A stretch of 64,000 nt of DNA from the NCBI GenBank assembly GCA_002269645.1, contig NIVC01001167.1, positions 261,933 to 325,932 of the forward strand. Reading direction: 5' to 3'. Positions 23,091-51,784 of this stretch are shown in pieces. Numbering within the stretch: position 1 is the first letter of the stretch; every line of letters starts with the position of its first letter. The notes beneath the pieces are model-generated. The model was not told the DNA's origin. It searched no databases and saw only the letters and a program-made list of their open reading frames with translations. The DNA is from Macrostomum lignano (Eukaryota). Made by a program: the position numbers and the translations under genes.

Positions 23091-24310
23091 CCTCCGGACG
23101 GCTAATTAAGACTGGGAAATCCAACTAGATAATTCTTCCGAAAGAACATTATTTACACGTGCTCGATGCTATCATTCTAAGAATAAATACCTTGCCAAAT
23201 ATTTACCGCTTTTTTGCACCGCATTTTTTCGTGTGTTGTTGTTGTTGTTAGCATACACTTGCCATTCTGGACATGCTTAGTTGTCATTATTACTCCATAT
23301 TAGTCATCAGAAATACTATTCATAATAATTTCAACTTGCTTATGTAAGATGCTCGACATTTAGTATATCCGGTAATTAATATTTTCTTCTCACTTACCTA
23401 TACGCATATTCTTAATAATTTCGCATGCTCACAACATTAAGTTTTATATCCAGTATATCGCTGGTAAGTGCATTAATATTTCCTTGTGTTTAACTAATTT
23501 CAAATACTTAAATAAATACAAATAATTAATGTACAAAAGAGGTTTTGCACATTTTGTAGTGAGGGGGAAATGTAGTAGAGCATTATTTTAGGAGTACAAC
23601 TAGGCACGAGTTAAATATGCTTTTACGCTACTAACAGTAGTTTCAGCTAGGGGAAATGATTAGAGCAGGGGTAAAAAGCTAACTTTGGGGTTTCTTTACA
23701 ACTAAAGAGCAGTTGGGCTCCTTAGAGCAGTTTTTGAGACCAGACTCGGCTCTAAACTCCAAATATTAACTGAACTAATTAAATTTTAAATTTTTCATTA
23801 ATTCAATAGGCTAAAATTTAAGTTTTGAATTTGCAGCAAACCCCTGCTCAGTTTTTCCAAATTATTATAAATTTTCCCTAGGCCACCAAAGCTTTCTTCT
23901 AAAGTAGCTGAGTGGTCCTAGTTAAATCTCTAAATAACCGAAATTAATACAGAAAAAAGCAAAAAAATCCAAAAAAATTAAATTGTAACTATAAAATAAA
24001 ATACTACATATTATAATCAATTTATTTACCTATAGTCTACTGTAACACATCTAAATTGTTTATTAAATTGTTGCCAGCAGCATCCTTGCCTCTTCTTTAA
24101 TTAAATTTGCTAAACTAGTCATTAGGCAATCCCTTTCTTTCTTCTTGGAGACCGTCTGCGCGCGCGCAAAATATCTACAAAGCAAAGAATATCCAATTGT
24201 GATAAGGTTACAGGACTCTGCTTGCTCACGATTCTGCATCCTAGTTCGAATCTTTGTGCAAAGAACTTATAGAATTTATTTTATAGCTAGCAATAATAAT
24301 AATAGCTGCA

Positions 24311-27245: not shown

Positions 27246-27262
27246 AATAATATAGGATAAAT

Positions 27263-29632
27263 ATGTTCGGTAATAACGGGCACGATAGCTCGAACCCCAC
27301 TGCCTCAGGGCTCAAGATCGGTCACCTAAACTGCAGGGGGGTAATACCGAAACTAAAAGAACTCAGGCTCTGCGTCTCAGACCAGAAATTGGATATTGCG
27401 CTGTTTTCTGAGACCATCCTGAAAAATTCCAAGTATGCACTTTCCCGGGCTATGCTGCAGTGCGGTTTGACCTTCCGATTACGAAGCGCGGACTCCTCCT
27501 TGTTCACACCCCACGGGTTAAGGTAGCAGACGTCCAGCTCTCGTACGACAACGTCAACCATGAGGTCCTTACTTGCACAGTCACTCCTGTTGACGGCGCA
27601 TGTCCACCTTTCCAACTATCCCTGGTCTATCGGTCCTCGTAGCCGGACAACCTCGACACCGGACTTTTGACGAGGCTGTCCTCGGCAAAATACTCGCTCA
27701 TCATGGGAGACCTCAATGCTAGGCACAGCTTCTTGGGGGGTGAAAGTCGCAACAACAGAGCAGGACAGCAGCTCCATGATTGGCTCTGCGTCGATCCATC
27801 CCACCGCCCCACCGTTCTCAACCAACCAGGCCAGTTCACTGGAATAGCCCACCGGCAAGGCGTTGTGTCCCGGAATGTGCTCGACCTTGGGTTAGCCTCC
27901 GGCGACCTCGTCTCACTTGTTCAAGACTTTAAAGTGGGCTCTGACGTGGACAGTGATCACCTCCCAATAATACTCACCCTGGCGAGTAACTCCCCAGACT
28001 GGCAAGGGCCAGAGAAGGCTCAAAACTTTGCCAAAGCTAACTGGGAAGAGTTCCAAAATTCCTTGATGGAAAAACTGGTACAAGCGTGGCCTCCAGACCT
28101 TAGTACTAGGCAGCAAATTGATGCGGAGGTCGACCTCATCACGAACGCGATCCAGAAAACCATCGAGGATAATGTCCCGGTCAGAAACGGCCGTAGAGCC
28201 CTCCCCCAGAGGATCATTGCCATGATCAAGGAGAGGAGGAAGCTCCGGCGTCTGTACCACAGTACCAGGGATGACAATTTTAGGCTGCTCGCGAATAGAA
28301 AGGCGAAGGAAATAAAAAGCGCTATTTATTCGTTTGAGCAGGGCCAGTTTACCCAGATGTGCGAGAAAATAGTTGAAAAAAGTCAATGCCGGAATGTCAA
28401 GGACTTCTGGCAGGACACAAAAAAATTGATGGGGCGCAAAAAGGGCACCACTATTCCGTCCTTGAATGATGGCGCCACCCTCGCACATACTGACTCAGAC
28501 AAAGCTGATATGCTAGCGAGAGCACTAGATGTCAAAATGCGCCCGATTCCATCGACCGATGAGGAGCTGAAGAAGAGGGTTGAGCAGGCTATGAAGCTCC
28601 CCATCTTTAGACCGATTCCCTCGGGCGTAGATCCATCCATGGGCCACCCCCTGGAGGCTCCGTTCTCTGTTACAGACACCCTCTGGGAGCTGGACCACCT
28701 AAAAGTTGACAGTGCTCCGGGCCTAGACAAAGTTCCTAACTGCGTCCTTAAACATGGCCTGGAGCCCATTGCGGTTACCCGAATCACTAAACTCTTCAAT
28801 GATTGCTATCGTACGGGCATCTTCCCATCGCAGTGGAAAAAAAGCGGTGGTGACGATGATTCCTAAACCTGACAAACCTCCTGAATCCCCGGGATCCTAT
28901 CGGCCCATCAGCCTGACCTCCTGCCTCGGCAAGGTGTTCGAGAAGTTATTGGTGAGGAGGCTGATGAAGCATCTTGAGGGCCAGGGTATCCTCGGCGCGG
29001 ATCAATGTGCGTACCGGAAGGTCCACTCAACTTATGACAATCTTGTCCGCCTCGTCCAGGACGTCCAGGTGGGCAAAGCTAAACTAAAAAGGATTCTGGC
29101 CATCCTCCTTGACGTACAAGCGGCGTTCGATTCGGTGTGGTATGACTACCTGAGGTTCAGGATGTATGAAGTCAACACGCCAGACGAAGTCCGGTTCCTT
29201 GGCATGAACCTGGACTACCGGCTGACCCTTAACTCGCATGTTGAAAGAGTAGTCAGCCACGGCCGGGCGCTTGCCCTGTCCATTAACCGCATTGCTAAGC
29301 TGACCCGGCTAAGCAGCAATACCCTTAAAATGCTATACAGGGCTTACGTTGAGAGTGCGCTGACTTACGGTGCCCCGGTGCTGAACATCATAGCACCCAG
29401 TAATCTCAATAAGCTCCAGAAAATCCAAAACTTAGCTCTTAGGATCTGCTATGGCGCCCCTAGTTACACCCAGGTAGCCTACCTGCATGAGCTGGCAGCC
29501 ATGCCTATGATGGCAGACAGGATTCGTTCCCTGGGTGTAGGCTGGCTCTCCAAGGTGAAGGCTGCTGGGCACCACGATTTCCACATTGAGCCGGAACTCC
29601 CTAGAGCTGCCCGCAACCGCCCCCAGTGCTGA
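27263..29632 (+). pseudogene. E1 ORF2: apurinic endonuclease + reverse transcriptase (central RT motifs deleted), no RNase H
   Basis: HLNCRG..FSET, MGDLNARH, LDLGL, DSDHLP, SAPGLD, YRPISLTSCLGKVFEK, DVQAAFDSV; jumps to VRFLG at ~29182 (PQG and YADD absent). Confidence 0.92.
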
Positions 29633-30093
29633 ACCTGCTATGGGACAGCCTGAAGAGGAGGCAAGCTAATAGACAAGCAGCTGCAAATGCGGCGGCCCGT
29701 GCGGCCCAAAACCCGCCCTAGATTTACTAGGTTAGCTGCCCCAAAAGAAAACTTAAAGTGCCCCCAAGACAGTGGCTTCCCCTCTCTATTACTCTGGACC
29801 TAGCCGTCTGTCAGTGCACAAATAAAAGGTCTAATACAAAAAATAGGCGTGAATAGTAGCGGCAAGTGCTGGACCAGGCGGGTGGGCCTACGACCCAGTA
29901 ACAATACAGTAAAAATAGCTGGGCTTACCTGTTGGTACTGCAGGTGATACTGTAATCCGCTGTAGAACTCTTCCTGATTCCGCCTCTCTTTACCTTTTTA
30001 CAATCCAATTATTTTAGACTGCAAATGCTCCTTTCACATCTGGCTTTTGCCTTGTTTATATTTTACTCTTATTTTTATCCTAACCCAAATATA

Positions 30094-31810: not shown

Positions 31811-32749
31811 TGCGAGACACATAAAATTTTAGTCCTATGTGCCAACCAGGCCAAACCAATATACTTTGCGTAGGGGCTGCTACTAGTAGTAGTTCCTGCC
31901 GCCTAGCTACTATTTTATACTCAAACCAAATGTAAATATTTAAAATACTGACTTTAAAAACCTTCGCGCTGATCCCCTTTTCGGTCCAAAATATCTTTGT
32001 GAGGACCCGTCCCATTTACCGTAGAGCTCCCCCCTTTATCAGTTGCGAACACTTCTTCACTTTTATATTCCTAAATGTACATAATCAATTTAAATCGAAA
32101 TTTTTAACCTTCGTATAACTAATAATTAGCATAATTTTTAAATTTAAATATATCGGCAGAGCCCTACCCGGGCTGACCCGAGGTGCCTTCAGCACCAATC
32201 GTTTAACAACAGAGCAGTCCTTGGTCCGTAGTTGCCTTGGTAACTTAAAATCAATTAAGTAGTGAGCTACTACAGGTATCCACAGTGTGGGCCTCGGGTA
32301 GCTCTTGCTTAATTGTGCTTAAGCATCTGGGGTGACTGTTAAAGTTGTTATAAGTAATCTTTTATCTTAAAATAGTCAACTTTATATTTATAGTAAGTGA
32401 ATCCAAGTTTTCCTTCTAGAATTTTCTATAACAGACTTCTTAATTATATCTATGGTTTTCGACTCCCTTACATGTACCACTAAGTTTTGTTTGAGCTACG
32501 CCAGTGCTCAATTCCATGTTAACCCTTTCTTTTGCTATCTTTCTCAAAACTCAATAAACGCCGATTCATTATAATTTAATAAGGCTTTCTTAATAGGTTA
32601 TGGGCCCTGCGCCCCTCCACTGTGATCTACTGCAGTGTGAACAATAAAGCTGCTTCAGTGGCAGTGCGTCAGTCGGCGTGATTTTCAGGCTCTACCGTCT
32701 CTTAGAAAGTTCAAGCTCAGCAGTCCAGTTGTGCTGGTGGATCGACACG

Positions 32750-34945
32750 ATGTCTTTCGATGCCAAACTACTGGTTGAGAAGTTGGATAGTTCCAACTAC
32801 ACTGTCTGGAAGTTCAAGATGAAGAACGTCCTGATGGAGCGAGAACTTTGGGAAGTTGTTGATGGTACAGAGACACTTGCTGAGGACGCGACCAACGAGG
32901 TCAAAGTTCAGTTCAAGCGGCGTGCGAACAAAGCCCTAGCGACTATCGTATTGGCTGTTGCGGATAGTCAAATTCATCTAATTGAGGATGCAGTAACTCC
33001 AAAGGAAGCGTGGGATAAGCTTCAAGCATATTTCGAGCGGAGTTCGCTGGCAAATAAATTGTTTCTTAATCGGAAACTACAAGCGCTCAAGATGGTGGAA
33101 GGTGCATCCATGCAGGAGCATGTTAATCAGTTCAAGGATATGGTCAAACGACTGTCGGCTATCGGAGCAGGTGTTCCCGAGGACTATCAAGTCACGATTT
33201 TGTTAAACAGTTTGCCGAAGTCATATGACGGGTTGATTACTGCCCTGGAATCGCGAGCGGACGACTTGACGATGAATTTCGTACTCGAGCGGCTTTTGCA
33301 CGAGGAGTCAAAACGACTTGAACAGGAAAGCTGTGAACCTAGCAGCAATTCAAAGGCTCTGGTTGGATTCAACAAGCAACAGCACCAGAGTGTCAGACCA
33401 AAAGTATGTTTTTCTGCAATAAGCCTGGTCACCTAAAGAAGCACTGTTACAAATTCAAGAATAGCCTCTCTGTGACAGGTGGATCGAGCACAAATTCAAG
33501 ACCACGTGCACAGGATTTGAAGAAATCCAACAGAAGGCATCAGGCGAGGATTGCAGACGCCCCAGCAAAAGACTTAAAGGACTTTTCAGCTTCAGATGAG
33601 GAAGATTCTGCATTTCCGGCGTTGTCTATGGGCACATCATCGACAGCTAACGAGTCTAGTACATGGATTGTAGACTCAGGCGCAACGAATCATATGAATA
33701 ATGATCGGACAAGTTTTGAGAAATTTGAAGATTTTTCGGTACTGGAGAACATTTCGCTAGCAGATGGACATAAGCTCGAAGCCACTGGAAAGGGAACCGT
33801 TCGGTTGTATATCAATACTGGTTCTGGTAAGAAATTGTGCGAGCTGAGCGACGTTCTATATGTACCACTTATGGAACAGAATTTGTTCTCAGTATCAGCA
33901 GTTACAAGAAAAGGCTTCCGTGTACAATTCAGCGACGACAAGTGTCAGATTTTGAGCGCAACTGGTAAGATTGTTGGAGAAGCTTTGAAAGTTGGCAGAC
34001 TGTACAAATTGAAAGGCTTTAACCTAACTAACGAGACTGCATCTGTCGCGAGAAACAACAGCATCGACCTATGGCATCAGCGCTATGGACACCTAGGTGA
34101 GCAAGACCTGAAATCTCTAATTAATGGAAAGCAAGTGGACGGAATTGAGCTTAGCAAGGATGACGTAAAAACTGAAGGCATCAGTTTCTGCACAGCATGT
34201 GTGGAAGGAAAGCAACATCGAACGCCATTTGCAAAGGGTGAAACGTCAATGTCAACTGAACTATTGGGTCTAATTCACAGTGACGTGTGCGGTCCCATGA
34301 AAACTACGTCAATTGGAGGATCAAAGTATTTTGTCACATTTATTGACGACTATTCGCGCTATTGCTCAGTTTACTTCATTAAAAGCAAGTCAGAAGTCTT
34401 AGAAAAATTCAAGATCTTTCAGGCTCTCGTCACGAATCAAACAGACAAGTCTATCAAGATTCTTCGGACTGACAATGGTGGAGAGTATACATCAGGAGAA
34501 TTTGAGGCATTCTGTGCCCGAAACGGAATCATTCACCAGACTACTGTCCCACACTCTCCTGAACAGAACGGAGTAGCCGAGAGAATGAACCGAACCTTGG
34601 TGGAGGCAGCACGAACAATGATTGCACATGCTCATATTGGCAAGGAATTCTGGGCAAAAACAATCTCTACGGCAGCATATCAGCGTAATCGATCAATAAC
34701 CAGCGCAGTCAACAAAGCGACACCATATCAAATTTTGACCGGCAGCAAGCCGAGTGTTCAGCATTTGCGAGTATTTGGATGCGTTGCCTACGCGCATGTC
34801 CCAGCTGAGAAACGTCACAAGTTTGACTCAAAAGCTCGGGAAGTCAGATTTATTGGATACTTGGAAACCTCAAAAGGATATCGTTGTTTTGATTTCCAAA
34901 CACGATCAGTTTTCGTCAGTCGCGATGTAACGTTCCAATTACAAT
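32750..34945 (+). pseudogene. Copia gag-protease-integrase (1-nt frameshift ~33410; RT/RNase H missing)
   Basis: NYTVWKFKM, CxxC..GHLKKHC, WIVDSGATNHM, LWHQRYGHL, IHSDVCGP, FIDDYSRY, RTDNGGEY, QNGVAERMNRTL, VSRDVTF. Confidence 0.95.
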
Positions 34946-34950
34946 CCGAT

Positions 34951-36800
34951 TAAAGAATGTTCTGACCACATATATTCATGAAACACAGACGGAATGGGCA
35001 AGATACGTGCCAACGGCGACTTTAGCCCTGAACATAAGCTATAATAAAAATCTTCGAACTTCCCCATATGAGCTAATTTTTGGCCATGCATACAAGACCC
35101 CCACCGAAAGAGTTCTAAAGGAACAAGTGTCTGTTTATGACGAAGCCCCAAGTTATGTAAAGAAGCTAGCTAGTTCTTTGAAATTGAGTTGGGATGTTGC
35201 AGGCCATTTTCTACTTCAAGAGCGTCTCAAACAAAGTGAGCAAGCGAACAAAGGAAGAAAATATCATAAATTATCTGAAGGAGACATCGTATATTTGGAA
35301 AAACCTGTGAAGGACGGAAAATTCGACACAAATTATGAAGGCCCCTTTACCGTCAGGAAAGTGATAGGCGATTCCACAGTTGCAATTCAAAGACCGGAAA
35401 ATGAACAGAACGAGGAAGCTAGAACAGTAAACGCCAATAGGTTGAAGAGACTATTGTCAGGCCCACCAATAGCAGTTCCACCATTCTCTGAAGAAACCAA
35501 TGGCAACACAACACATGATGCGCATAAAATCAGATTGCACAAATCCAACGCCACGCAGACAGAAGTAACAGAGGAATCAGCTTGTAAGAGATTCACTTTG
35601 CGTCCACGCAAGAACTAGAACCATGAATATCCTGAACGACTTTGAGCGCCGAGCATGGATCTACCATAGGATCCACTTCTTTCAATGGTTCTCCCCCCTA
35701 CTGCCGGGTTATAAGGAAAGAGTAATACCCATCTTGGAAGATATCCGAACGGAAGCACGTAGACTATACGAACCGGGAGTTTCTGAAGTAGAATTCAGAG
35801 AGCCGCCACCGACACGGCTGATTGATGTATACAAGACGGAGCTCCGCAATCTCGCTGACGATATGTACGATGACGAATATCGCGAGGGACGCATTATTTG
35901 GGAGCTGATAGTTATCTGCTGCACCAAACTGCTTTCTCTCCTAAGAAACGAGGGTAATGCGAATACTACTGAAGAGGACAGCTCAGAGGACAACTGAAGC
36001 TCAAGTTGAGTCGGACAACATAAATCGAAGATCGCAGATGGTTTTGAGGCGAGATTGAACGAGCTACATCGCTATATCCAGAATGATAAAAGCTTTACGA
36101 GATTAAAATCATTCGCTCATACTTACAGCTATTTGCTTTCATACTAGTCTCAATGATTTCTTCATTTCCATATTTTACTAAATGCAAATGTGGGGACCAC
36201 ATTTTGAAAAAGGGGGAGTAATATAAGGATTCAATTTCATATGCATGTAGGCCTTAGGGACTATTTAGGGACTATTTTAGGAAGTAGTATTAGGGACTAA
36301 ATTAGGCAATAATTAGGGAATTGCATTGTTATCAGAGCGTGGTGAAGTGTAGCAGTTGTGGACAGCTGCACTCTTACAAAAAGCCACAAGTGCTTGATGA
36401 CGGCATTGCAAAGGGCGAGTGCAGGCCGCCCTAAAAGTCTGCTTCCACTTTAGAGGGGTTGTATGCTTTATGTGGGGCGAGGTTCAATTACATTTTTAAC
36501 AGAGACATTTCAGAAATCGCACGAGAAAGGGGAACCGTGAGAATCGGCCGGAATTGCGCGGTGGCTGGAAGACGTGGGAAATGATAACGCAGACAGTTTC
36601 ACAGGGACTTCATCGGGGAAATTTACTATAAATAAGCGAGGGGTTACGAGCGTAAATGCTAAAAACTTTACCTTTTTTCACTCTCTTTTCACTCTCTTTT
36701 ACACGCCTTGTATTAACTTTTGGATTGCTTAATAGTTTGCAAATCACGACGACCGCTTCTGCAGACACCTGTGACCTGAGGGTAAGACTGAGCACTGCCA
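34951..36800 (+). mobile_element. Gypsy 3' fragment: integrase C-terminus/GPY-F, extra ORF, PPT (36206-36218) and 3' LTR (from ~36219; end uncertain)
   Basis: EWARYVPTATLALNISY..SPYELIFG, GDIVYL..YEGPFTV; PPT GAAAAAGGGGGAG. Confidence 0.85.
35623..35997 (+). CDS. Additional ORF of unknown function directly after Gypsy pol
   Basis: ATG 4 nt after the pol stop; 124 aa, non-repetitive; may once have extended to ~36146 across two stops. Confidence 0.5.
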   Translation: MNILNDFERRAWIYHRIHFFQWFSPLLPGYKERVIPILEDIRTEARRLYEPGVSEVEFREPPPTRLIDVYKTELRNLADDMYDDEYREGRIIWELIVICCTKLLSLLRNEGNANTTEEDSSEDN

Positions 36801-37684
36801 TGACTATAGATTTATGAATAGTAGCGTATCGGTCTCAGACTAGGTAGATAGGCGTAATTTATATATATATATATATATATAATAGATTAATAGGAGTATT
36901 TGAGTAGCTTAGTTATACCGTAGTGTCTCAGACTTATTCTCCCTGCTTGTAGCTCGCTTATTTGCTTATTTACTTATTAATACAAACGTTGAAAATGCAG
37001 TAGTAAATATAATTATATGGTTGATCGGTAAACAACATCCAAACATATTCTACCTCGTTTGAGTTACTATTAATCATATGTAAGGTTCTTAGTTTGCGGC
37101 CAACTAGAAAACTTATACTATGGTTTTCAACTCCCTTACCTGTACCACTGAGTTTTGTTTGAGCTACGCCAGTGCTCAATTCCATGTTAACCCTTTCTTT
37201 TGCTATCTTTCTCAAAACTCAATAAACGCCGATTCATTATAATTTAATAAGGCTTTCTTAATAGTGACTACTCTCCTGGCGTCGGCATCGACCTCGGCAG
37301 TGACTTTCGGCGACTTTGGCTTCCGCGGCGACTTCAGCGACTCCGGCCTCGTCAGCGGCTTCTCGGCGCCTGCAGCCTCGGCGACTTCGACGGCCCGGTG
37401 TCTCGGCGGCTCGGCTGGTCGGCAGCTCGGTGACTCGTCAGCGCGGCGCCAGGTGCCTGCAACTGTTCGGCCAGCCTCGCGCGACGTCTGCAACACGGCG
37501 CCAGGTCTACCGGCCTAGTAGATACCAGAGCATAGCATCGTTTTAAAGACTTTTCTTGCACTCTCTAGAATTGGCTCTACTTTAAGTAGTATCATTTGAT
37601 TTTTAAAGTTTTACTAGTTTTAGTTTTAAATAGTTTTATTAGGCCTACCGCTTTTCTTGAATTTAGTACTGTCAGTAGTAATCC

Positions 37685-40183
37685 ATGGAAGTAGAGACCC
37701 AGAACAAACGCTCATCTCGCGACACCGACTCGCCACCGGTTGTCACGGCGACGAAAAAGGCAAACAATCGCTCGTCCTCTGGTCCTGGACGAGCGTCCAA
37801 CTCTGCTCCGACGGCAAGCAGCGTGCCAGCATGCGCCAAGCTAGAAGAAGAACCTCCAGCAGTCAGCAGTCGGGATGTTCAAGCCCCAGCACCCTCGTCT
37901 GAGGCCAGATCCAGGCTGTCCATCGCGGCGAGTCATCCTCTGCCTCCTGACGAAAATGACGCGCCTTCAGGTGAGACCTCCCCGGGGTCGGGCTCTGGCA
38001 CTGGTTCTAAAACGGTTCAAATAAATAAGACTGGTGAACAAATTCTAAATCTAGGACACAATCATGGCCAGCTTAGGTACCTACCTCAGGCCTTAGCTAA
38101 AATTGAGAACGATCTCACTAACATTATTATGAAAGAAATTCATCCTGCCGCGTTTCACCACCAAACAAACGGGCGACCTGAAATGAGAAAAGTAGTTTGG
38201 TTTGGGCCACCGTACTCTTACAGAAATGGCCAGCTTGACAGAAATGATCAATGGCACCCAGAGTTTATCAAACTAGTCACCTGGCTCCACGTTGAACTGG
38301 GATTACCACTCTTCAACTCCTGTCTTATCAACTTCTATGAAGATGGTAACACGACTATTCCATGGCACGCCGACAACGAACCTGAGCTTGGAGTCAACCC
38401 TACTATAGCCTCTATCTCGTTAGGTGCTCCAAGAGAGTTTGTAGTCAGGGCCAACACCTCAAAGAATATTGTGTTCAAACAACACCTGGCCAGCGGCAGC
38501 GTTCTCATTATGAGTGGCTCAACCCAGCAGCACTTCCAACATTGCATCACGAAGGACCCAAAGGTAAAAAATATGAGAATCGACTTAACTTTCCGAACAA
38601 CTCAAGACCCGGCACCGATAACGCCGCACTTCAATCCTTGCGTGCGTCCAGCAGATGATGCCATTGAACAGCAGCCAATCACCTGTGACCTAGACAATGA
38701 AGAGTCAATTCACCTAAAAGCTCAAGAAGAAAAAGCCAACTTTGAACGCATTAGACAATTAAGCCAATCCAGCACTAGTTCTTATCGCCAGCACAATCAA
38801 TCTAACAACCAAACTAAAGCTAAGGGGTCTGCACCGGTACTTTTCGAAGTCGCCCTAGAAGGGAAGGACCCCATCCAATTCGAACGGTTGCTCAAGACCA
38901 ATTTTCCTAACATCAGGGTCAAATCTGTCAAATAATTGTGCCATTCATCTGGTTACATAAAAATTCCTGAACATCCTAAAGACTTCAATGTACTCCTAAA
39001 TGGGCCGCTTAAAGTAGACTCCATCAATGGGCATGAAGTTACTCGCAGACTTGCCTCCAAACGACCAACCCGTCAAGGCGATGATCGATCACAAATTCGA
39101 GGACCTCTCAAGGCACCAAATTTACACTCATTCATAGTAAAAATGTAAAAAAAATGCGGTTGATGTCAGCGGCCTAGCGAAACACCTCTCGGAGGGTGAC
39201 CAGCAGCTTCCAATTGATGGGGCTGTCCGCATCTACTCGAAGGCTACTGGTCAAGCTACCCCCTTTGTCCGCCTCTTCACTAAATGCCGTGGCGCCATGG
39301 ACCACTGCATTGAACATGGCATCTACCTTGGACTGTTCCGGTACCGCTGTGAAGCCTCAACCAGCCTCCCACCAGTCAAAGCGATTCAATGCAAACGTTG
39401 CCAAGGCTTTGTTCACCTCGAGACTCGATGCACATCTGGTTTCAAGTGCAACAAATGTGCTCAAGACCACTACTCTGGCGATTGTCCAAAGGAGCACAAG
39501 TTCAAGTGCGCAAATTGCGAAGGAGAGCACCCGGCTTATTCCTACAAATGCCCAATGGTCAAGAAGGCCAACGAAGCTGCTACAAGTAAAGAACACGAGC
39601 GCATTAACAACTTAAAACTAAAACAAAAACGAAAAAAAAATTTCCGGAATAACCAGTTGCCATTTGGGAGCCAGACCCTTGGGGAGGTTTTCGGCGTTCC
39701 AGGTCCGCAGTCCTATGCCGAGATGTTGCGTCCCAACCCAAACCAGCTCTGCCATCCATGGGTCCAATTGCCTACTCCAACCGAGCTGCTCAGGCTTTCA
39801 TCTCGGCCTCGGCTCAGCCTGCTGACTCTCTCGCTGCCGCCGCTGCCAACCATCAAGCGCTGCTAGGTGCAACCAATCCATCTGAGTTCACAACAGCTGC
39901 TCCAGCCAATCCGGTCTCGACGCAATCTGGAGTTGATTCTACTAATCAATCAGGACCATGTGAGAGGGGCCTTTTCTCTCGGGAAGACGTGCTCGAGGTT
40001 GCGTTGCTGGCGCTTGACCGACTCATGAGCATAGAACCAGGACGGATGTTCACCCCCTGGGAGGCGGGGCAACTTGTCTTCCGGGTGGTGTCTAAAGTCG
40101 TAAGGGTGTTCAGGAATCAGAGAGTGCCTGTTGCAGAGTCAGGGGACACCAAAGTCGCGCAAGCGAACGGAGGTGGAACCTGA
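37685..40183 (+). pseudogene. E2 ORF1: N-terminus + intact AlkB domain + RRM-like region + three CCHC knuckles (stop 38933, frameshifts)
   Basis: CKRCQGFVHLETRC, CNKCAQDHYSGDC, CANCEGEHPAYSYKC downstream of AlkB; PVLFE..FPNIRV..VTRRL shared with E1 and E4. Confidence 0.9.
38068..38596 (+). CDS. alkB: AlkB (ALKBH2/ALKBH3-like) 2OG-Fe(II) dioxygenase domain of E2 ORF1
   Basis: RKVVWFG..YSY, FNSCLINFYEDG, WHADNE (H 38366, D 38372), IASISLGAPREF, LASGSVLIMSGSTQQHFQH (H 38540), RIDLTFR (R 38576, R 38594). Confidence 0.95.
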
Positions 40184-40272
40184 ACTCTCTGATTATAAGT
40201 TGCTTAGCTTAGTTCAATATATTCAATTCTACTCGTAAAACTCCTACGACAAATACCAAAAGTCACTCCGTT

Positions 40273-43048
40273 GTGCGGGACTTCCTCAACATTGGGCATC
40301 TGAACTGTAACTGGCTCAGCAACAAAATCTATGAAATAATTTCATGGCTAAATAATGAGGACTTAGATATAGGACTATTCTCCGAAACTGGCTTAGTTGA
40401 TACAAACCCTTTCTTTGTTCAAGACTACGCTATCCTTAGGTTTGACAAACCTCACTGTAGAAGAGGACTTGCCGTAGCTTATAAAAATAATCCTAACATT
40501 ATGAATATTAAAAAGTTTTATGACAACAGTCACCATGAATACATTAGTTTTGAGGTTTTCTTAAAGCATAACAGGTTGAACAAGCTTAATATAGTCCTCT
40601 TCTACAGGGCTCCCAACCCCACCAGGCTAAACTGTGACATTTTAAACAAACTTTTCTCTAATCCCTCCACCCTGGTCATTGGGGACTTTAATTGTAACCA
40701 TCTTGCCCTTAGTGGAGATTCCAATTATAATTACCCTGGCAGACAGCTCTTTGACTGGCTAGAAGAGCACCCCAACCCCCCATCTTACTAAACAACTATG
40801 GTGAGTTCACCAGAGTGTGCAATCGTGGCGGCTCCCACACTGCGAACGTGCTGGACTTGGGGCTTTGCTCTCCCAACCTTGGCGCCCACACCAGAGAGGT
40901 CCTTATAGGGGACGACTTGGACAGTGACCACTTCCCCATCATTATTAAAGTCTACCTTGACCCAAACAGTAAAATATCGAAAAAAACCCAAAAGTTTTTG
41001 GAGCACTGACTGGGAGACCTTCAGGGTGGTTCTTCAAGACAAGCTCAGTGACAATCAAATCAGCAATCTTAGGTTAGCTACTCCAGGTGAATTAGATCGA
41101 GCTGAAGATCTGTTAACTCAGAGTCTGAATGACACGATTGAGGAGGTGGTCCCAAACAGGGACCCCCGCGAGCAGCTCCCTCCCGACATAATAGCCAAGA
41201 TTAAGTACAGGAGAAAACTTGGGAAGCTTTTTAGGAATACCCGAATAGATAATTTTAGGATTCAGACGAATCAAGCTGCCAAGGAGATCAGGCTAGCCAT
41301 TCGTGTGCACAGGTCAAGAAAGTTTGAAAACTTATGTGAAAAAATTTCCAAGACCAGTTACCGTAAAGAACCAAGAAAATTCTGGGTTGACATAAAAAAA
41401 ATGATAAGTGAGGGTCCCAAACCCATCACCTACCCCCCGATTGTTCTCAAAGACTGTCGCTGATACTGAAGCTGAGAAAGCTCAGGCCTTCAAAGAATTC
41501 CTCGAGGCTCAGATGCGTCCCTGCCCAGATAGATCCACCCAGCTGTACAAAAAGATTGAGGCCCAAAAAGATCTTGAGATCTACAAACCTCATAACAACA
41601 TCTTAGCTGCGTTAGCCTATCATAAAGACCATGCTGATCCCGATAATCCGGACAAAGAAGACGTAGAAGCTGATATCCTTAATATCATAGATCAGGATGT
41701 TCTATGGGAAAGCAGGAAGCTCAGGGCAGGGGGGGGGCTCCTGGGCCTGACAAGATACCGAATGTTGTCCTCAAATTTAGCCTGAGTCCAGACTCCATCA
41801 GGGTGCTTGCGAAAATCTTTAATGCTAGTTTCCTCCTTGGATACTTCCCCAAGCGATGGAAAATGGCCACTGTCAAAATGATATCCAAACCTAATAAGCC
41901 AAAAAATCTCAATGCTTATTATTAGCCTTACCTCTTGTTTAGGTAAACTTTATGAGAAAATCTTAGCAAGGAACCTTCGGGTTATCTTAGAAAATCTAGG
42001 GATCATTAATGACGAGCAATGTGCCTATATGTATGATCATAGTACCTACGATAATATTGTTCGACTTACTGACGATGTGCTAAAAATGCTCCAGCTGAAA
42101 CAGTACACGTTGGGGGTCTTTTTTGACGTAAAGGGAGCCTTTGATGGGGTCTGGCACAACTACCTTAAATTCAAAACTCGAAAGTGTGGAGTCCCGCACA
42201 ACATGACCAGAATCTTAGCAAATTATCTTGACGATAGAACTGTCGAGATTGTAGTAGCTGGAGCTCAAAGTGCAGGGTTCCAGCCAAAAGCAGGTGTCCC
42301 CCAGGGGGGTGTCCTTTCGCCCCTACTATTTATTATTTATGTCAGCTCTATACCAAAACCGACAGATAATAAAGTTAAAATTAGTCAGTTCGCTGATGAC
42401 TTGGCGGTCTGGGCATGTGCAAGAAAATCTACCATGTCTGCTAAAAGACTCAACGACTACTTCATCCGTCTCAAAAGGTGGCTTGATGCTGTTGGTATCA
42501 CTATTAATGCCTCAAAAAGTAAAGCAATCTCCTTCTTCAAGGCGAACGGCAACAAAACAGGCCCTGGTGAACCCCTAATCAAACTTGGGAACAACAGAAT
42601 TAGTTATTATGACACTGTCACCTTTCTTAGCATGGTCCTAGACAAACAACTTAACTACAAACCTCACGTCGACAAGGTCGTAGGTACTACCACAAAAAAG
42701 ATTGCTGCGCTAGACAGAATGGTTAAAAATTCCAGAATTTCCCAACTCGGACTACGACTGATCTATGGGTCTTACATTGAAAGTACCATCGCTTACGGTG
42801 CTCCAATTCTTCTTAATCTTTCCGACTTCCAGGTCAATAGAAATCAGGTGCTCCAAAACAAGGCTCTGCGTATCATCCTTGACGCTCCACCCTACATCAA
42901 AATTTCCTACATTCACTTGGTCACTAACATGCCCATGATCAAAGATCGCCTGCTCAGCCTGGGGAAAAAATGGTTCAAAAAAGCGTTAGAAAGCGGTATA
43001 CATAATTTTAAAGAAGACACTAAAGAATGGTCGAGACCCGGCTTTTGA
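40273..43048 (+). pseudogene. E2 ORF2: APE + complete RT, no RNase H (stops and frameshifts)
   Basis: HLNCN..FSET, IGDFNCNH, DSDHFP, APGPD, ISLTSCLGKLYEK, DVKGAFDGV, GVPQGGVLSP, QFADD, FLSMVLD. Confidence 0.95.
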
Positions 43049-44924
43049 GTCCCGGTCACAACCGTTCTCAGGAAAAAACTTAATGCCTAAATTATAGCCA
43101 GATTCTTGGCTATAAGACTAATATTGTGCCCTTTTTGTTGGGGATTGATCTGTCGACCCTCTTCTATTTGTTAATTTTTGAAATTATAAAACAAAAAATT
43201 TTGCCGTACAACGGGACGGCTCCTGAGGTTATAACCTGCCTTCCTAGGGGTACTAGCATGGGATATGCATGCTATGCTGCATAGCCCTCTCTATCCACAG
43301 CTCCCTCAGGACGGGAGACGTTTTAAACCTGGAACCCCAAACCAGGTGGACCAATAGGCCCTTAACTCTGACTGAGTGAGCCGCTTTGGATTGGATTTGG
43401 GGTTTGGATTGCTATTTATAGCTTCAAAAAATTTGACATGACAGCTATGGAAACTTCGTTTTCGTAGCAGTAGTATGATTTGAATTTGACCATTAATATT
43501 GATTATTCTTAGGAATGATCGATTAAATTTTGACTCGAGCACCTCTCTCCGGGAGAGAGTCCAAACTTTACTGCTGGCTTTGATTCCAATCAGTTGACCA
43601 AATCTTAATGCGACTATCTTCCACTTAAAGTATTAGTCATCAAATCAAATATTTTTCAAATATTGCTAAACGTTTCACTTTTATTCTTTCCAAATTGCTA
43701 AAATTCTTTTATTCTGTTTATATTTAGCTCAAATATTTTCTTTGTGATTTCTTTACTTTGTTTTTACTCCTAATCTTGAAATTTTCATTTCAGTTTTAGT
43801 TTTATCTCACTTTCTTTATCTCTTGTTTTACTCTTGCTCTTATCTTTTCTATCTTTTATACTCGTATTATTTGTTATATAGCTACCCCCAAATATTTGTT
43901 TTATGTAAATATTTCCTCGTTTTTTACTTTTCCTAAATTGGACGTTCATAATCTAATAATTTGGAACACAAAAATACATAGTCGCGCAAGAGCCCTTCAA
44001 AGGGCTGAGGCGCAGGGCAATTCTATTTTATATTAGCCCCTACCTATCAAGTAAGTAAGTAAGTCCTTAGAGCAGTCCTTGGCTTTTTTGGAAAGTTAAG
44101 AAATTGCTGTGCTTTAGACACCACAGGTATCTACAGTGTAGGCCTACAGGTGTTTACTGTGCAGTATATTGACAAGCTTTCTGGGAAACCCACGTTACCT
44201 GGCGTCTTCGGCTTCTGCGGCGATCAACGGGTTCTGCAGCTTCTCCGGCCTCGGCGACTGCTCTTCAGCGACTTCGGCATCGTCGGCGGCGTCTGCGGCG
44301 GCCAGCTTCGACGGCAGCATCGGCGCCTGCGGCTTCGGCGGTTCGACGGCTGGGCCGGGCTCAGCGGCGGCGGGTGCGCGGCTCTTCAGCGGCGACGGCA
44401 CGGCACCAGGCACCTTGCGCGGCATCAACACGGCGCCAGACCCGCTCGTCTTATAGAAACTAGGACCTATTATCAGTTGTAGACTTTATCTTGCATTTAG
44501 TTGACTATAGACTACTGACAGTAGGTCAATTAGCATTTTCTTATAGTTTATTAATTAAGTTTTAAGTTTTAAGTTTTAATTAGCCTACCGTTTTAAGGCT
44601 TTATCTTGTATATTAATCTTATTAACAATTTATTTAAATGGAAATTGAGACTAATAGTAAGAGGGCACGTGAAACCGACTCGCCACCGGTCACTAAAAAA
44701 GCCAACAACCGTACTTCAACTGGCACCGACCGGTCTGTTGCTGCGTCGTCCATTCAAGCGTCGTCTCGTATGCAGCATCAGCACACTCTTGACGAAGAAC
44801 CTTCGGTCGGCGTCCAGGATGGTGAGCCCAGGCCTGTTCTGAAAGAGTCACATTTCTCAATCTCAAAGCCAGACTTATCAGATGACAAAACTTACAAACC
44901 AGTTCCAAACTGCAAGATCAGATA

Positions 44925-45439
44925 TATCCCTAATGAAGGCTAATGAGGCTAAACTCACCAAAATCCTCATGGAGGAGGTATACCCGCTGTCCTTCCACCA
45001 TCAAACTGGGGGTAGACCGGAAGCTAGGAGGGTGGTCTGGTATGGGCCAGAATACACCTACGGTGGTAGCAAGCTTGAAAGTAACGACGACTGGAACCCG
45101 GTTGTCACGCACCTTGCCACATGGTTGTGTATCGAGCTCAATCCGCCATTAGCAAATTCCTGTCTCATTAATTTCTACAAAGACGGGTCAGTAGCCATCC
45201 CATGGCACTCAGACAACGAGCCGGAGCTAGGAGATGACCCGACAATAGTGTCAGTGTCATTAGGTGCCCAGAGAGATTTTCAGCTCAGGACAAAGGGCAT
45301 GAGTCAGAACGTTGTCTTTTCGCAGAAGCTGGCTAGCGGCAGTGTAACAGTAATGAGTGGGGCCACGCAACGGTACCTTCAGCACTCTATCGCCAAAGAC
45401 CTGAAAGTCAAAGATTTTAGAGTTAATCTTGCATTCAGA
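44925..45439 (+). CDS. alkB: AlkB domain of E3 with all catalytic residues
   Basis: RRVVWYG..YTY, NSCLINFYKDG, WHSDNE, IVSVSLGAQRDF, LASGSVTVMSGATQRYLQH, RVNLAFR. Confidence 0.93.
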
Positions 45440-45639
45440 ATCACTAAGGATCCCAGAATTGAGAACTCACCAGCTCATACACCTGCATCAGCCAATCCTT
45501 GCGTCCGTCCGACTGACGACTCCATCACCTGCCACCTTGACGATGAAGAGTCGGTACGGCGCAGGGGTAGGCAGGACGCAGAAAACATGCAAAAGATTAG
45601 TTCACGCTCCAGCAGCAGCTGTAGGCTTAACTCTAAAAC

Positions 45640-46150
45640 TAATCGAACCAATCAGGACACTCAAGCACAAACAGCCAATCAGCGATCACAGCAGACTACT
45701 CAGCAATCCACTAAGCAATCTAAACCTAGCACTCAGCAGCCTCACTCAGCCAATCAGCACTCAGGCACTCAGCAGCCAGCCACTCAGCCTAACACTAAGC
45801 AGTCAAACGCAGCCAATTAGCACACACAATAAGGCACTCAGTAACATTCGTCAAACACTCAGCAGTCACATTCAGCCAATCAGCAATCAGGCACACAGCA
45901 GCCAGCCACTCAACCCAGCACTCAGCAGGCACAAGCAGCTCTGCAATCACAAGCAACTAAACCAGCTAATCAGACTCAGCAGCAAGCTTCCACTCAGGGA
46001 GTAAACTCAGGCAATCAGCAGTCAGCACCAAGAATTCACACTCAACCACCCAACAGCTACCAACTACCTGCAACTCAGCAATCAAACATTCACACACAGC
46101 AGTCACAAGCACGCACTCAACAGTCAGCCACACAACAACCTAACAATTCT
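45640..46150 (+). repeat. CAGC/ACTCA-rich degenerate repeat expansion (Q/S/T/N-rich)
   Basis: Recurring CACTCAGCAGCC / AATCAGC units. Confidence 0.8.
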
Positions 46151-47190: not shown

Positions 47191-47323
47191 ACCCCAGCCA
47201 TTTTAACTATTGACAAGCTTTTGTTGGAATATGACTTCAGATTTTGGAAAACATGCAAAAGTAGTTTCGGGGATTGGAATTCCACGGTTTCAATATACGC
47301 GGTTTTCAGTAGCTTGTGCTAAG

Positions 47324-51782: not shown

Positions 51783-51784
<2 letters not shown>

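What the first reader, a model, noticed from the sequence alone, without database searches (positions are those of the whole stretch)
37685..43048. LINE retrotransposon family with an AlkB nucleic-acid demethylase fused into ORF1
Seen: E2 ORF1 reads N-terminus, AlkB (WHAD, FQH, RIDLTFR all intact), RRM-like region, three CCHC knuckles, then an APE+RT ORF2. The same fusion occurs in two other divergent members (E1, E3), so it is a family trait and not a chance capture. Established: ALKBH2/3-type enzymes remove m1A/m3C from DNA and RNA, and plant RNA viruses (Flexiviridae, Closteroviridae) carry AlkB in their replicases. Known Jockey-superfamily ORF1 add-ons are RRM, CCHC, PHD and esterase; I do not recall AlkB among them but cannot check. 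Inference: ORF1p coats the element RNA, so a fused demethylase could clear RT-blocking lesions from the template or cDNA, or erase host methyl marks. That would be a retrotransposon-encoded epitranscriptomic or repair system.
Basis: partly seen in the sequence, partly recalled or inferred. Interest (0 to 1): 0.93.

Follow-up and report, generated by a model that had tools for sequence, protein, structure and literature searches.

The report
LINE retrotransposons carrying an AlkB demethylase
The window holds three dead copies of a flatworm-type LINE retrotransposon whose RNA-binding ORF1 protein carries an ALKBH3-like nucleic-acid demethylase; intact relatives exist elsewhere, unrelated LINE lineages captured the same enzyme independently, and I found no published description.

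Summary
E2 encodes, in order, an N-terminal region, a complete AlkB domain (Pfam 2OG-FeII_Oxy_2, E=5e-30; HxD, H and RxxxxxR intact), two RRMs, three CCHC knuckles, a C-terminal helical region, then APE+RT. The predicted fold matches human ALKBH3 and ALKBH2 (TM about 0.8).

All three window copies are dead. E2 has a nonsense codon and two frameshifts in ORF1, a broken ORF2 and a Copia element in its 5' UTR. E1 has lost the HxD segment. E3 is split by about 14 kb.

Intact single-ORF AlkB-RRM-CCHC proteins (757-962 aa) exist in public assemblies, followed by APE or APE+RT ORF2; one 9-kb contig carries a full-length member. At least seven lineages below 50% identity keep the fusion, and AlkB is the best conserved ORF1 module. 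It is therefore a long-maintained family trait.

New here: two other LINE types carry phylogenetically separate AlkB domains. One is PHD-AlkB-esterase (ctenophore and marine assemblies, over 100 clusters). The other is AlkB-coiled-coil. A Penelope-like element may be a further case.

Most likely function (inferred): cis repair of RT-blocking m1A/m3C on the element's RNA or cDNA. Nine literature searches found no prior description; Repbase and Dfam could not be checked.

The parts
32205..32339 (+). E2 5' end and first part of the 5' UTR (starts AGAGCAGTCCTTGG), cut off from the rest by a Copia insertion
   Evidence: It aligns with the E3 5' end at 44068 and following. GTGAC at 32335-32339 is repeated at 37265-37269, as a target-site duplication would be.
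32340..37264 (+). Nested Copia-type LTR retrotransposon inside the E2 5' UTR (not part of the LINE)
   Evidence: The 153-bp terminal repeats are 97.4% identical (alignment). Pfam finds Copia gag, gag-pre-integrase, integrase core and SH3.
37265..37684 (+). E2 5' UTR, second part, with a GC-rich segment conserved in E3 (37289-37428 vs 44246-44384, 71% identity)
   Evidence: Self-BLAST; sequence.
37685..40186 (+). E2 ORF1, conceptual: N-terminal region, AlkB, linker, two RRMs, three CCHC knuckles, C-terminal helical region. Broken by a stop at 38933 and by frameshifts near 39145 and 39750
   Evidence: Three-frame translation; tblastn with M. lignano P0001/P0308.
38093..38605 (+). E2 AlkB (ALKBH3/2-type Fe(II)/2OG dioxygenase) domain, with catalytic H-x-D, H and RxxxxxR intact
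   Evidence: Pfam E=5e-30. PDB sequence search: ALKBH3 1.4e-21, ALKBH2 2e-12. AF2 pLDDT 89.9; Foldseek ALKBH3 TM 0.8-0.89.
38828..39300 (+). E2 tandem RRM region (contains the stop at 38933 and the first frameshift)
   Evidence: Alignment with intact relatives. The homologous E3 segment models as two RRMs.
39390..39551 (+). E2 three CCHC zinc knuckles
   Evidence: Read from the translation. The relative P0164 hits Pfam zf-CCHC.
40273..43048 (+). E2 ORF2: APE endonuclease (about 40285-40990) and reverse transcriptase (about 41734-42700, FADD). Full length but with several frame changes and stops
   Evidence: Pfam. The intact 948-aa ORF2 of L013 maps on 40285-43012 in alternating frames. Three-frame translation.
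43049..44066 (+). E2 3' UTR with a stem-loop (43984-44013, GCGCAAGAGCCC..GGGCTGAGGCGC) and a short (AAGT)n tail (44050-44066)
   Evidence: Sequence; motif scan. A similar stem-loop lies near the 3' end of the intact relative L013 and at 32163-32195.
23723..30092 (+). E1: a divergent, GC-rich, decayed member. ATG at 24311, AlkB remnant at 25058-25584 with HxD lost, RRM/CCHC at 25816-26613, ORF2 at 27263-29632 with an internal RT deletion
   Evidence: tblastn; translation; Pfam. Its closest relative is P0167/P0205, in which the motif WHSDDE is intact.
44068..46150 (+). E3, 5' part: 5' UTR (starts TAGAGCAGTCCTTGG directly after the E2 tail), ATG at 44638, a frameshift near 44900, AlkB at 44945-45460 (WHSD, LQH and RVNLAFR intact), Q-rich linker
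   Evidence: (Pfam E=2.8e-26).
60494..64000 (+). E3, 3' part: rest of ORF1 (two RRMs, CCHC region apparently lost), then ORF2 with APE from 61647 and RT running off the window end
   Evidence: tblastn; translation.

Best explanation
What is shown. E1, E2 and E3 are three dead copies, from three divergent subfamilies, of an APE-type LINE family. The closest database relatives are in the flatworm Macrostomum lignano. The family's ORF1 protein is a Type-I gag-like protein (two RRMs plus three CCHC knuckles) with a complete ALKBH3/ALKBH2-type Fe(II)/2-oxoglutarate dioxygenase fused at its N-terminal side. The fusion is old and is kept under constraint. Intact full-length members exist elsewhere.

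What is inferred. ORF1p coats the element's own RNA in cis, so each ribonucleoprotein carries many demethylase modules held against single-stranded template. The enzyme would oxidatively remove Watson-Crick-face methyl lesions, mainly 1-methyladenine and 3-methylcytosine. These lesions stall reverse transcriptase. Removal could act on the RNA before or during target-primed reverse transcription, and possibly on the single-stranded first-strand cDNA. The effect would be a higher yield of full-length, undamaged insertions. This is the role shown for the AlkB domains of plant RNA viruses.

At least two other LINE lineages, and an orchid Gypsy element, recruited AlkB independently. That argues for a general benefit of such an activity to retroelements.
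For: Identity.
- Pfam AlkB, RT and APE hits.
- Catalytic residues are invariant in 28 aligned sequences and across family lineages.
- AF2 model pLDDT 89.9. It covers about 200 of 215 residues of human ALKBH3 bound to 3mC ssDNA (8jnr/8jnk, E about 2e-17, TM 0.8-0.89) and of ALKBH2. E. coli AlkB (TM about 0.6) and ALKBH5 (about 0.57) are weaker matches.
- The sequence is closer to ALKBH3 (1.4e-21), the paralogue that prefers single-stranded substrates, than to ALKBH2 (2e-12).
- Tandem RRM fold and three CCHC knuckles.

Family trait and constraint.
- Intact ORF1s P0162-P0165, with APE or APE+RT ORF2 downstream.
- L013 is full length, with a 948-aa intact ORF2.
- At least seven lineages: E2; E3/P0001; P0161; P0162-3; P0164-5; E1/P0167/P0205; P0169.
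- Mean identity between lineages: AlkB core 49%, RRM1 41%, CCHC 38%, RRM2 37%, C-terminus 28%.

Convergence.
- A PHD-coiled-coil-AlkB-GDSL-esterase ORF1 family of more than 100 clusters, including Mnemiopsis leidyi.
- L003 has an intact 766-aa ORF1 overlapping by 4 nt an intact 1143-aa PHD-APE-RT ORF2.
- Its 90% cluster has 57 members. At least seven distinct full-length variants, 98.5-99% identical, lie on different large contigs.
- L011 has an AlkB-coiled-coil ORF1 followed by an APE+RT ORF2.
- In a bootstrapped NJ tree the PHD-esterase AlkBs form their own clade (1.0) and never join the flatworm type (0.0). The L011 AlkB sits with animal ALKBH3.
- The RTs of E2 and L003 are only 24% identical.

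Precedent for the mechanism.
- Plant-virus AlkBs demethylate m1A/m3C and prefer RNA (PMC2553587).
- An orchid Gypsy-encoded ALKBH5-like protein binds RNA and demethylates m6A in vitro (PMC9289625).
- That m1A and m3C block reverse transcriptases is established knowledge; I did not test it here.
Against: - No biochemical data exist for any of these proteins. Substrate (m1A/m3C or m6A or other; RNA or DNA) is inferred from subfamily resemblance only.
- All three window copies are pseudogenes, so nothing in this window acts today.
- E2 and E3 read H-x-D-N-E where most relatives and ALKBH2/3 read H-x-D-D-E. The significance is unknown.
- Direct tests of selection (dN/dS) had no power: the available contigs were identical or differed at one site.
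- Monophyly of the flatworm-type AlkB clade has weak bootstrap support (0.23-0.42).
- Human L1 is reported to benefit from m6A and to be suppressed by ALKBH5 (PMC7873242). Removing methyl groups is therefore not always good for a LINE.
Confidence: 0.6

Rival explanations
1. Epitranscriptomic counter-defence. The ORF1-borne demethylase erases methyl marks that host enzymes deposit on the element's RNA (m6A, enzymatic m1A or others), or on host RNAs. This would escape reader-mediated decay, sequestration or silencing. It would not be repair of chemical damage.
For: The orchid Gypsy AlkB is an m6A demethylase, and its authors propose exactly this (PMC9289625). m6A affects L1 and ERV RNA fate in mammals (PMC7873242; cited in PMC9289625). 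Tethering to an RNA-binding protein fits action on RNA.
Against: The domain is ALKBH3/2-type. It resembles the m6A erasers of the ALKBH5 type only weakly (sequence E about 3e-3, TM about 0.57). In human cells ALKBH5 suppresses L1 (PMC7873242).
Confidence: 0.2
2. DNA-level repair. The enzyme acts on DNA rather than on the RNA template. It would remove 3mC/1mA from the single-stranded target DNA or cDNA at the integration site, or 3mC made as a by-product of cytosine DNA methyltransferases acting on methylated transposon DNA.
For: ALKBH2/3 repair DNA, and the fold matches DNA-bound ALKBH3 and ALKBH2 equally well. DNMT1/3 co-occur with ALKB2 across eukaryotes because DNMTs make 3mC, and M. lignano is reported to keep DNMT1, DNMT3 and ALKB2 (PMC9246332). 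CpG observed/expected is mildly low in the LINE copies (0.60-0.87).
Against: ORF1p is an RNA-coating protein that is made and assembled in the cytoplasm. The host already has ALKB2 for its genome. The sequence is closer to the single-strand/RNA-preferring ALKBH3 than to the duplex-specialised ALKBH2. The CpG depletion is weak and not specific.
Confidence: 0.12
3. Functionless passenger. A host ALKBH exon was transduced or fused by chance and is carried along neutrally. Alternatively, the apparent fusion is an artefact of gene models or of adjacent insertions.
For: All copies in this window are degenerate, and E1 has lost its catalytic HxD. Some database proteins are truncated or chimeric models; P0002, P0003 and P0308 show internal deletions or UTR read-through.
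Against: Uninterrupted ORFs of 757-962 aa are read directly from DNA contigs. The fusion is kept in at least seven lineages at 30-50% identity with invariant catalytic residues, and AlkB is the best conserved module. Independent captures occur in other LINE types that have many young intact copies.
Confidence: 0.03

Closest known systems
AlkB domains in the replicases of plant positive-strand RNA viruses (Alpha-/Betaflexiviridae, Closteroviridae)
   Same: An AlkB dioxygenase is built into a polyprotein of an RNA-templated replicon. It was shown to remove m1A/m3C with a preference for RNA, and the proposed role is to keep the template intact (PMC2553587).
   Different: Here the host element is a LINE retrotransposon of animals. 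The domain sits in the RNA-coating ORF1 protein, not in the polymerase polyprotein. The polymerase to be protected is a reverse transcriptase.
Phalaenopsis (orchid) Ty3/Gypsy elements with an ALKBH5-like ORF (PMC9289625)
   Same: A retrotransposon lineage acquired and kept an AlkB-family demethylase. RNA binding and demethylase activity were shown in vitro.
   Different: That case is an LTR element in plants, with a separate additional ORF, a domain of the ALKBH5 (m6A eraser) subfamily, and a recent acquisition in a single lineage. Here the element is a non-LTR element in animals, the fusion is in-frame within ORF1, the domain is ALKBH3/2-type, the fusion is old, and capture is recurrent.
Type I (Jockey-like, 2 RRM + 3 CCHC) LINE ORF1 proteins and their known accessory modules (PHD, esterase, coiled coil/CTD) (PMC4120745, PMC3905857)
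   Same: The RRM-RRM-CCHCx3 core, the modular evolution of ORF1, an APE+RT ORF2, and a 3' stem-loop with a short microsatellite tail, as in CR1/L2-like elements.
   Different: An enzymatic nucleic-acid repair or demethylation module is not among the described ORF1 domains. The second family found here adds AlkB to a PHD+esterase ORF1 in a ctenophore, whereas the cited survey found esterase ORF1s only in vertebrate groups.
Human ALKBH3 (and ALKBH2)
   Same: Best sequence and fold match. The iron and 2OG ligands are identical, and the match is full length, including the N-terminal substrate lid.
   Different: ALKBH3 is a stand-alone cellular enzyme with about 28% identity to the LINE domain. The LINE version is embedded in an 750-960-aa RNA-binding protein.
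Retrotransposons that captured other epigenetic enzymes or readers (DNMT, MBD) as cited in PMC9246332
   Same: A mobile element captures a host nucleic-acid-modification module.
   Different: A different enzyme class and a different element type; I did not examine these cases here.

Membership tests
AlkB / ALKBH2-3 subfamily of Fe(II)/2-oxoglutarate dioxygenases | Sequence membership: Pfam 2OG-FeII_Oxy_2 above the gathering score | tested here: met
   E2 scores 105.6 bits against a cut-off of 31.2, E=5e-30. E3 scores 93.4 bits. E1 gives only 17.9 bits and is a remnant.
AlkB / ALKBH2-3 subfamily of Fe(II)/2-oxoglutarate dioxygenases | Iron-binding H-x-D...H triad and 2OG-binding R-x5-R | tested here: met
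   E2 has WHAD, FQH and RIDLTFR. E3 has WHSD, LQH and RVNLAFR. These residues are invariant or nearly so in alignments A3 and A5. E1 does not meet this feature: HxD is lost.
AlkB / ALKBH2-3 subfamily of Fe(II)/2-oxoglutarate dioxygenases | Double-stranded beta-helix fold with the N-terminal nucleotide-recognition lid, closest to ALKBH2/3 rather than ALKBH5/FTO | tested here: met
   AF2 pLDDT 89.9, pTM 0.86. Foldseek: ALKBH3 TM 0.8-0.89 over about 200 columns; ALKBH2 about 0.8; EcAlkB about 0.6; ALKBH5 about 0.57. This is a predicted structure, not a solved one.
AlkB / ALKBH2-3 subfamily of Fe(II)/2-oxoglutarate dioxygenases | Oxidative demethylation of m1A/m3C in nucleic acid | not testable with these tools
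   This needs recombinant protein assays.
APE-type non-LTR (LINE) retrotransposon with Type I ORF1 | ORF2 with an N-terminal APE endonuclease and an RT, and no LTRs | tested here: met
   Pfam Exo_endo_phos_2 and RVT_1. The intact 948-aa ORF2 of L013 maps collinearly on E1, E2 and E3. No terminal repeats flank the elements.
APE-type non-LTR (LINE) retrotransposon with Type I ORF1 | ORF1 with RRM(s) followed by CCHC knuckles | tested here: met
   Three knuckles read in E2. Tandem RRM model and fold hits. zf-CCHC Pfam hit in the relative P0164.
APE-type non-LTR (LINE) retrotransposon with Type I ORF1 | Defined 3' end (tail or stem-loop) and target-site duplications | tested here: inconclusive
   A 3' stem-loop plus an (AAGT)n tail is seen in E2, and a similar stem-loop in L013. 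Target-site duplications could not be defined, because the 5' ends abut the 3' ends of other copies.
APE-type non-LTR (LINE) retrotransposon with Type I ORF1 | Placement of the RT in a named clade (Jockey, CR1, L2, Rex1 and so on) | not tested
   No reference RT set (Repbase/RTclass1) was available. The best database RTs are 38% identical or less and unnamed. One weak hit is named 'transposon BS'.
APE-type non-LTR (LINE) retrotransposon with Type I ORF1 | Coding-competent copies | tested here: not met
   This feature is not met in the window: E1, E2 and E3 all carry stops, frameshifts or insertions. It is met outside the window: L013 has intact ORF1 and ORF2, and L003 does for the second family.
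Retroelement-borne ALKBH5-like m6A demethylase (orchid Gypsy type) | AlkB domain of the ALKBH5 subfamily | tested here: not met
   ALKBH5 matches only at E about 3e-3 to 8e-3 by sequence and TM about 0.57 by fold. ALKBH3 matches at 1e-21 and TM 0.8-0.89.

The most novel reading that the evidence does not exclude
AlkB-type nucleic-acid demethylases have been recruited independently, and kept for long periods, by several non-LTR retroelement lineages of animals: Type I RRM-CCHC LINEs of flatworms, PHD-esterase LINEs of ctenophores and other marine eukaryotes, a coiled-coil-ORF1 LINE, and possibly a Penelope-like element. If so, methyl lesions or methyl marks on the RNA template are a general and so far unrecognised barrier to retrotransposition, and elements overcome it with their own repair or eraser enzyme carried on the RNP coat protein. 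A side effect: transposon-borne AlkB copies could inflate or confuse presence/absence calls for host ALKBH2/3 in comparative genomics.
Probability: 0.5. Interest if true: 0.85.

Novelty: new variant of a known kind. Interest (0 to 1): 0.78.

Why it matters
ORF1 proteins of LINEs are known as RNA-binding chaperones with a few accessory modules. An enzymatic base-repair or demethylase module on the coat protein would be a new functional class for LINE ORF1.

Plant RNA viruses, an orchid LTR element and several animal LINE lineages all acquired the same enzyme. That points to a common selective pressure: methylated bases block polymerases that copy RNA.

The idea is directly testable. Intact sequences are available, and simple assays exist: complementation of an E. 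coli alkB mutant, demethylation of oligonucleotides, and retrotransposition reporters with HxD mutants.

There are three practical consequences. First, AlkB treatment is already used in the laboratory to remove RT blocks, and here nature seems to have done the same. Second, TE-borne AlkB copies may confound surveys that link ALKB2 presence to DNA methylation; this is my inference (context in PMC9246332). Third, compact ORF1-AlkB fusions are natural examples of RNA-tethered demethylases.

Tried and rejected
1. dN/dS between close copies had no power. Contigs L004-L006 and L007-L010 are identical within each group. L015 and L016 differ at one nonsynonymous site in 2889 nt. I used module-wise conservation instead.
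2. P0001 could not be located on any contig, so no M. lignano DNA was available.
3. The RT homologue search gave no clade-level names and no close relatives; the best hit is 38% identical. The LINE clade therefore stays open.
4. I guessed that P0244's C-terminal half is an L1-type (Transposase_22) ORF1. Neither Pfam nor a PDB sequence search supports this. I keep only 'coiled-coil-like, followed by APE+RT ORF2'.
5. I searched for terminal repeats of the roughly 14-kb insertion in E3 and found none. Its nature and exact borders are unresolved.
6. The 5'-end motif TAGAGCAGT is not enriched in the window as a whole (18 matches against 16.6 expected). Only its position at the three 5' ends is notable.
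7. The 'recent host-exon transduction' reading is rejected (see the rival explanations).
8. CpG depletion as a clue to DNA methylation is weak and inconclusive.
9. The source organism could not be identified beyond 'closest relatives in Macrostomum lignano at 54-61% amino-acid identity'.

Full report
1. WHAT IS IN THE WINDOW

The ORF at 37685-38935 carries a bona fide AlkB domain (Pfam 2OG-FeII_Oxy_2, 105.6 bits against a cut-off of 31.2, E=5e-30). The iron ligands (WHAD, FQH) and the 2-oxoglutarate motif RIDLTFR are intact.

Reading on in three frames gives the following order:
- an RRM-like region;
- three zinc knuckles (CX2CX4HX4C, CX2CX3HX4C, CX2CX3HX6C; 39390-39551);
- a C-terminal helical region, with the end of ORF1 at 40186;
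- an ORF2 with an APE endonuclease and a reverse transcriptase (RVT_1 E=1e-31, FADD).

tblastn with these pieces finds two further copies with the same order. E1 lies at about 23723-30092. E3 lies at 44068 to about 46150 and continues from about 60494 to the window end.

2. STATE OF THE COPIES

None of the copies is functional.

E2:
- ORF1 has a nonsense codon at 38933 and frameshifts near 39145 and 39750.
- ORF2 is full length when compared with an intact relative, but it alternates between frames and contains stops.
- The element is larger than the stated coordinates. Its 5' end is at about 32205.
- A Copia-type LTR retrotransposon sits at 32340-37264 inside the 5' UTR. Its 153-bp LTR ends are 97.4% identical. 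Pfam finds Copia gag and integrase domains. GTGAC flanks it on both sides.
- The 3' UTR runs to a stem-loop (43984-44013) and a short (AAGT)n tail (44050-44066).

E1 is GC-rich and decayed. Its AlkB has lost the HxD segment and about 30 residues, and its RT core carries a deletion.

E3 has a frameshift before AlkB. Its AlkB motifs are intact (WHSD, LQH, RVNLAFR). ORF1 is then interrupted in the Q-rich linker by about 14.3 kb of repeat-rich DNA, and it lacks the knuckle region.

3. THE ALKB MODULE

By sequence the closest solved structures are:
- human ALKBH3 (E=1.4e-21);
- ALKBH2 (2e-12);
- ALKBH5, only marginally (3e-3).

An AlphaFold2 model of residues 111-325 of the E2 ORF (28-sequence alignment, pLDDT 89.9, pTM 0.86) superposes over about 200 residues:
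- on ALKBH3 bound to 3mC-containing ssDNA (TM 0.8-0.89, E about 2e-17);
- about as well on ALKBH2;
- less well on E. coli AlkB (about 0.6) and on ALKBH5 (about 0.57).

It is therefore a complete ALKBH3/2-type domain, including the N-terminal substrate lid.

4. THE REST OF ORF1

A model of the homologous, uninterrupted E3 segment (60641-61114; pLDDT 81) shows two beta-alpha-beta-beta-alpha-beta units. Its best structural matches are all tandem-RRM proteins, such as FIR, PABP, IMP3, HuR and PTB.

In the published classification, two RRMs plus three CCHC knuckles is the Type IB ORF1 of Jockey-like elements (PMC4120745). The 3' stem-loop plus microsatellite tail resembles CR1/L2-type ends; this comparison rests on my own knowledge. 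I could not place the RT in a named clade. The best database RTs are 38% identical or less and carry no useful names.

5. IS THE FUSION A FAMILY TRAIT UNDER SELECTION?

Yes.
- The nearest database proteins are three Macrostomum lignano proteins at 54-61% identity. One of them (P0001, with P0308 in its cluster) joins AlkB, a Q-rich linker, RRMs, knuckles and the C-terminus in one ORF.
- An exhaustive HMMER search with P0001 found further members: P0161, P0162/P0163, P0164/P0165, P0167/P0205 (the lineage of E1) and P0169.
- P0162-P0165 are uninterrupted ORFs of 757-962 aa read from DNA contigs, with APE or APE+RT ORF2 directly downstream (L004-L010, L013-L016).
- L013 (9.1 kb) is a full-length member. 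It has an 843-aa ORF1, a 948-aa intact ORF2 and the family's 3' stem-loop.
- These lineages are only 30-50% identical to each other and to the window copies. All keep HxD, H and RxxxxxR.
- Between lineages, the AlkB core is the best conserved ORF1 module: 49% mean identity, against 41% for RRM1, 38% for CCHC, 37% for RRM2 and 28% for the C-terminus.

This pattern is not what a neutral passenger or a recent host-exon transduction would show. Direct dN/dS tests had no power.

6. BEYOND THE FINDING: INDEPENDENT CAPTURES

PHD-esterase family. A weak hit, P0015, led to a second, large family of more than 100 clusters at 90% identity.
- Its ORF1 is PHD finger, coiled coil, AlkB, GDSL/SGNH esterase.
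- In L003 an intact 766-aa ORF1 overlaps by 4 nt an intact 1143-aa ORF2 with PHD, APE and RT.
- Its 90% cluster has 57 members. At least seven distinct full-length variants, 98.5-99% identical, lie on different large contigs, which indicates a young, recently amplifying family.
- A degenerate copy lies on a Mnemiopsis leidyi chromosome (L002).

Coiled-coil family. A third architecture has AlkB at the N-terminus of a coiled-coil-like ORF1, followed by an APE+RT ORF2. It occurs in L011.

Possible Penelope-like case. [quoted passage not shown] That is the Penelope-like architecture. This is one contig with weak Pfam scores, so it is tentative.

Phylogeny. In a bootstrapped neighbour-joining tree of 82 AlkB domains:
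- the PHD-esterase AlkBs form their own clade (support 1.0) and never join the flatworm type (0.0);
- the L011 AlkB sits among animal ALKBH3-like proteins;
- the flatworm-type sequences cluster together, with the L012 protein, but with weak support (0.23-0.42).

The RTs of E2 and L003 share 24% identity. The simplest reading is at least three independent captures.

7. MECHANISM

Shown: the domain composition, the intact catalytic residues in E2, E3 and all intact relatives, the ALKBH3/2-like predicted fold, and the physical fusion to RNA-binding modules.

Inferred:
- ORF1p binds its own RNA in cis, so the template is coated with demethylase modules.
- ALKBH3-type enzymes remove m1A and m3C from single-stranded DNA and RNA. 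These lesions block base pairing and stall reverse transcriptases (established knowledge, not tested here).
- The most economical function is therefore repair of the RNA template, and possibly of the first-strand cDNA, during target-primed reverse transcription.
- The plant-virus precedent is direct. Viral AlkB domains demethylate m1A/m3C, prefer RNA, and are thought to protect the genome RNA (PMC2553587).

Rivals:
- Erasure of regulatory marks as counter-defence. This is the reading proposed for the orchid Gypsy ALKBH5-like protein (PMC9289625). It is weakened here by the ALKBH3/2 rather than ALKBH5 affinity, and by the report that ALKBH5 suppresses human L1 (PMC7873242).
- Repair of DNA, for example 3mC made by DNA methyltransferases. 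M. lignano is said to keep DNMT1/3 and ALKB2 (PMC9246332). CpG depletion in these copies is only mild.
- A functionless passenger. This is strongly disfavoured.

8. NOVELTY

Nine full-text searches returned no description of an AlkB domain in a LINE or a Penelope-like element. They combined AlkB, dioxygenase or 2OG-FeII with non-LTR, LINE, ORF1, esterase, CR1, Penelope-like, Macrostomum and Mnemiopsis.

The dedicated survey of Jockey-superfamily ORF1 domains lists RRM, CCHC, PHD, coiled coil/CTD, esterase and zf/lz only (PMC4120745). The orchid paper names only RNA viruses as other AlkB-bearing mobile elements.

Repbase, Dfam and subscription journals could not be searched, so prior annotation cannot be excluded.

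I rate the finding a new variant of a known kind: AlkB carried by a mobile element or virus, now in LINE ORF1 proteins, of the ALKBH3/2 type, and recurrent.

9. VERDICT

The window copies are dead. E1's AlkB is a remnant. The element boundaries are wider than stated.

The finding gains weight from intact relatives, from long-term conservation and from independent captures in other LINE lineages. The proposed function is plausible and testable, but unproven.

Noticed in passing
window 44050-44076; 32163-32218; 23700-23731: Head-to-tail junctions. The (AAGT)n tail of E2 is followed within 1-2 nt by the full-length 5' end of E3 (TAGAGCAGTCCTTGG). The 5' end of E2 (AGAGCAGTCCTTGG) is preceded by a 3'-end-like stem-loop from another family member (32163-32195). 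E1 also starts with TAGAGCAGT. All copies are on the + strand. This could reflect insertion next to resident copies or end-to-end template jumping; it is unexplained.
   Followed up: partly
window 30105-31810: An 843-bp unit is tandemly duplicated (91% identity). Each copy starts with the reverse complement of the family's 3' stem-loop (30117-30148, 30996-31028) and abuts a (TAG)n/(TAA) microsatellite at 30093-30113. It is probably the 3' UTR of a minus-strand, 5'-truncated family member lying tail-to-tail with E1.
   Followed up: partly
window 32340-37264: A Copia-type LTR retrotransposon is nested in the E2 5' UTR, with the flanking 5-bp repeat GTGAC. Only the last 153 bp of the two LTR regions are alike (97.4%); the first 100 bp or so differ.
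   Followed up: partly
window about 2700-12400: A DIRS-like element: an ORF with DUF3504/phage-integrase (tyrosine recombinase) at 2766-3677, an RT-like match at 8316-8822, RNase H at 9139-11269, and a GC-rich core (56-58%).
   Followed up: no
window about 46150-60494: About 14.3 kb interrupts E3 ORF1 and is rich in repeats. These include a 14-bp satellite (47333-47615) with an inverted copy (48345-48450), a CT-rich array (49756-50692), (ACAG)n/(CAGA)n (51783-51862, 53055-53425), and an inverted 250-bp pair (47923-48175 / 51482-51737). There are no recognisable protein domains and no terminal repeats.
   Followed up: partly
L013 4346-4717; L014 3167-3538; L005 3269-3643; L006 3177-3551: In the P0164/P0165 lineage a conserved small ORF of 123-124 aa (basic, N/K/S-rich) lies between ORF1 and ORF2. 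It is absent from E2, where the spacer is about 90 nt. It has no Pfam hit.
   Followed up: no
L012 1805-7083 (Logan SRR19193851): An AlkB-containing ORF lies directly upstream of an RT (YIDD) + GIY-YIG ORF (Penelope-like architecture). Its AlkB groups with the flatworm LINE type in the tree, which hints at module exchange between retroelement classes.
   Followed up: partly
L003 7001-12729; L002 7199-12067 (Mnemiopsis leidyi CM108485.1): The PHD-AlkB-esterase ORF1 LINE family also has a PHD finger at the start of ORF2. An esterase-type ORF1 in a ctenophore conflicts with the earlier view that this type is confined to vertebrates (PMC4120745).
   Followed up: partly
window 37264-37518 and 44150-44482: The GC-rich segment of the 5' UTR is conserved between E2 and E3 (71% identity) and is open in several frames on both strands. 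The N-terminus of the M. lignano model P0003 looks like a translation of this UTR, so that gene model probably reads through the UTR.
   Followed up: no
literature (PMC9246332): M. lignano is cited as retaining ALKB2 together with DNMT1/3. Its proteome contains LINE-borne AlkB proteins annotated only as 'Fe2OG dioxygenase domain-containing protein', so presence/absence surveys of ALKB2/3 could pick up transposon copies.
   Followed up: no
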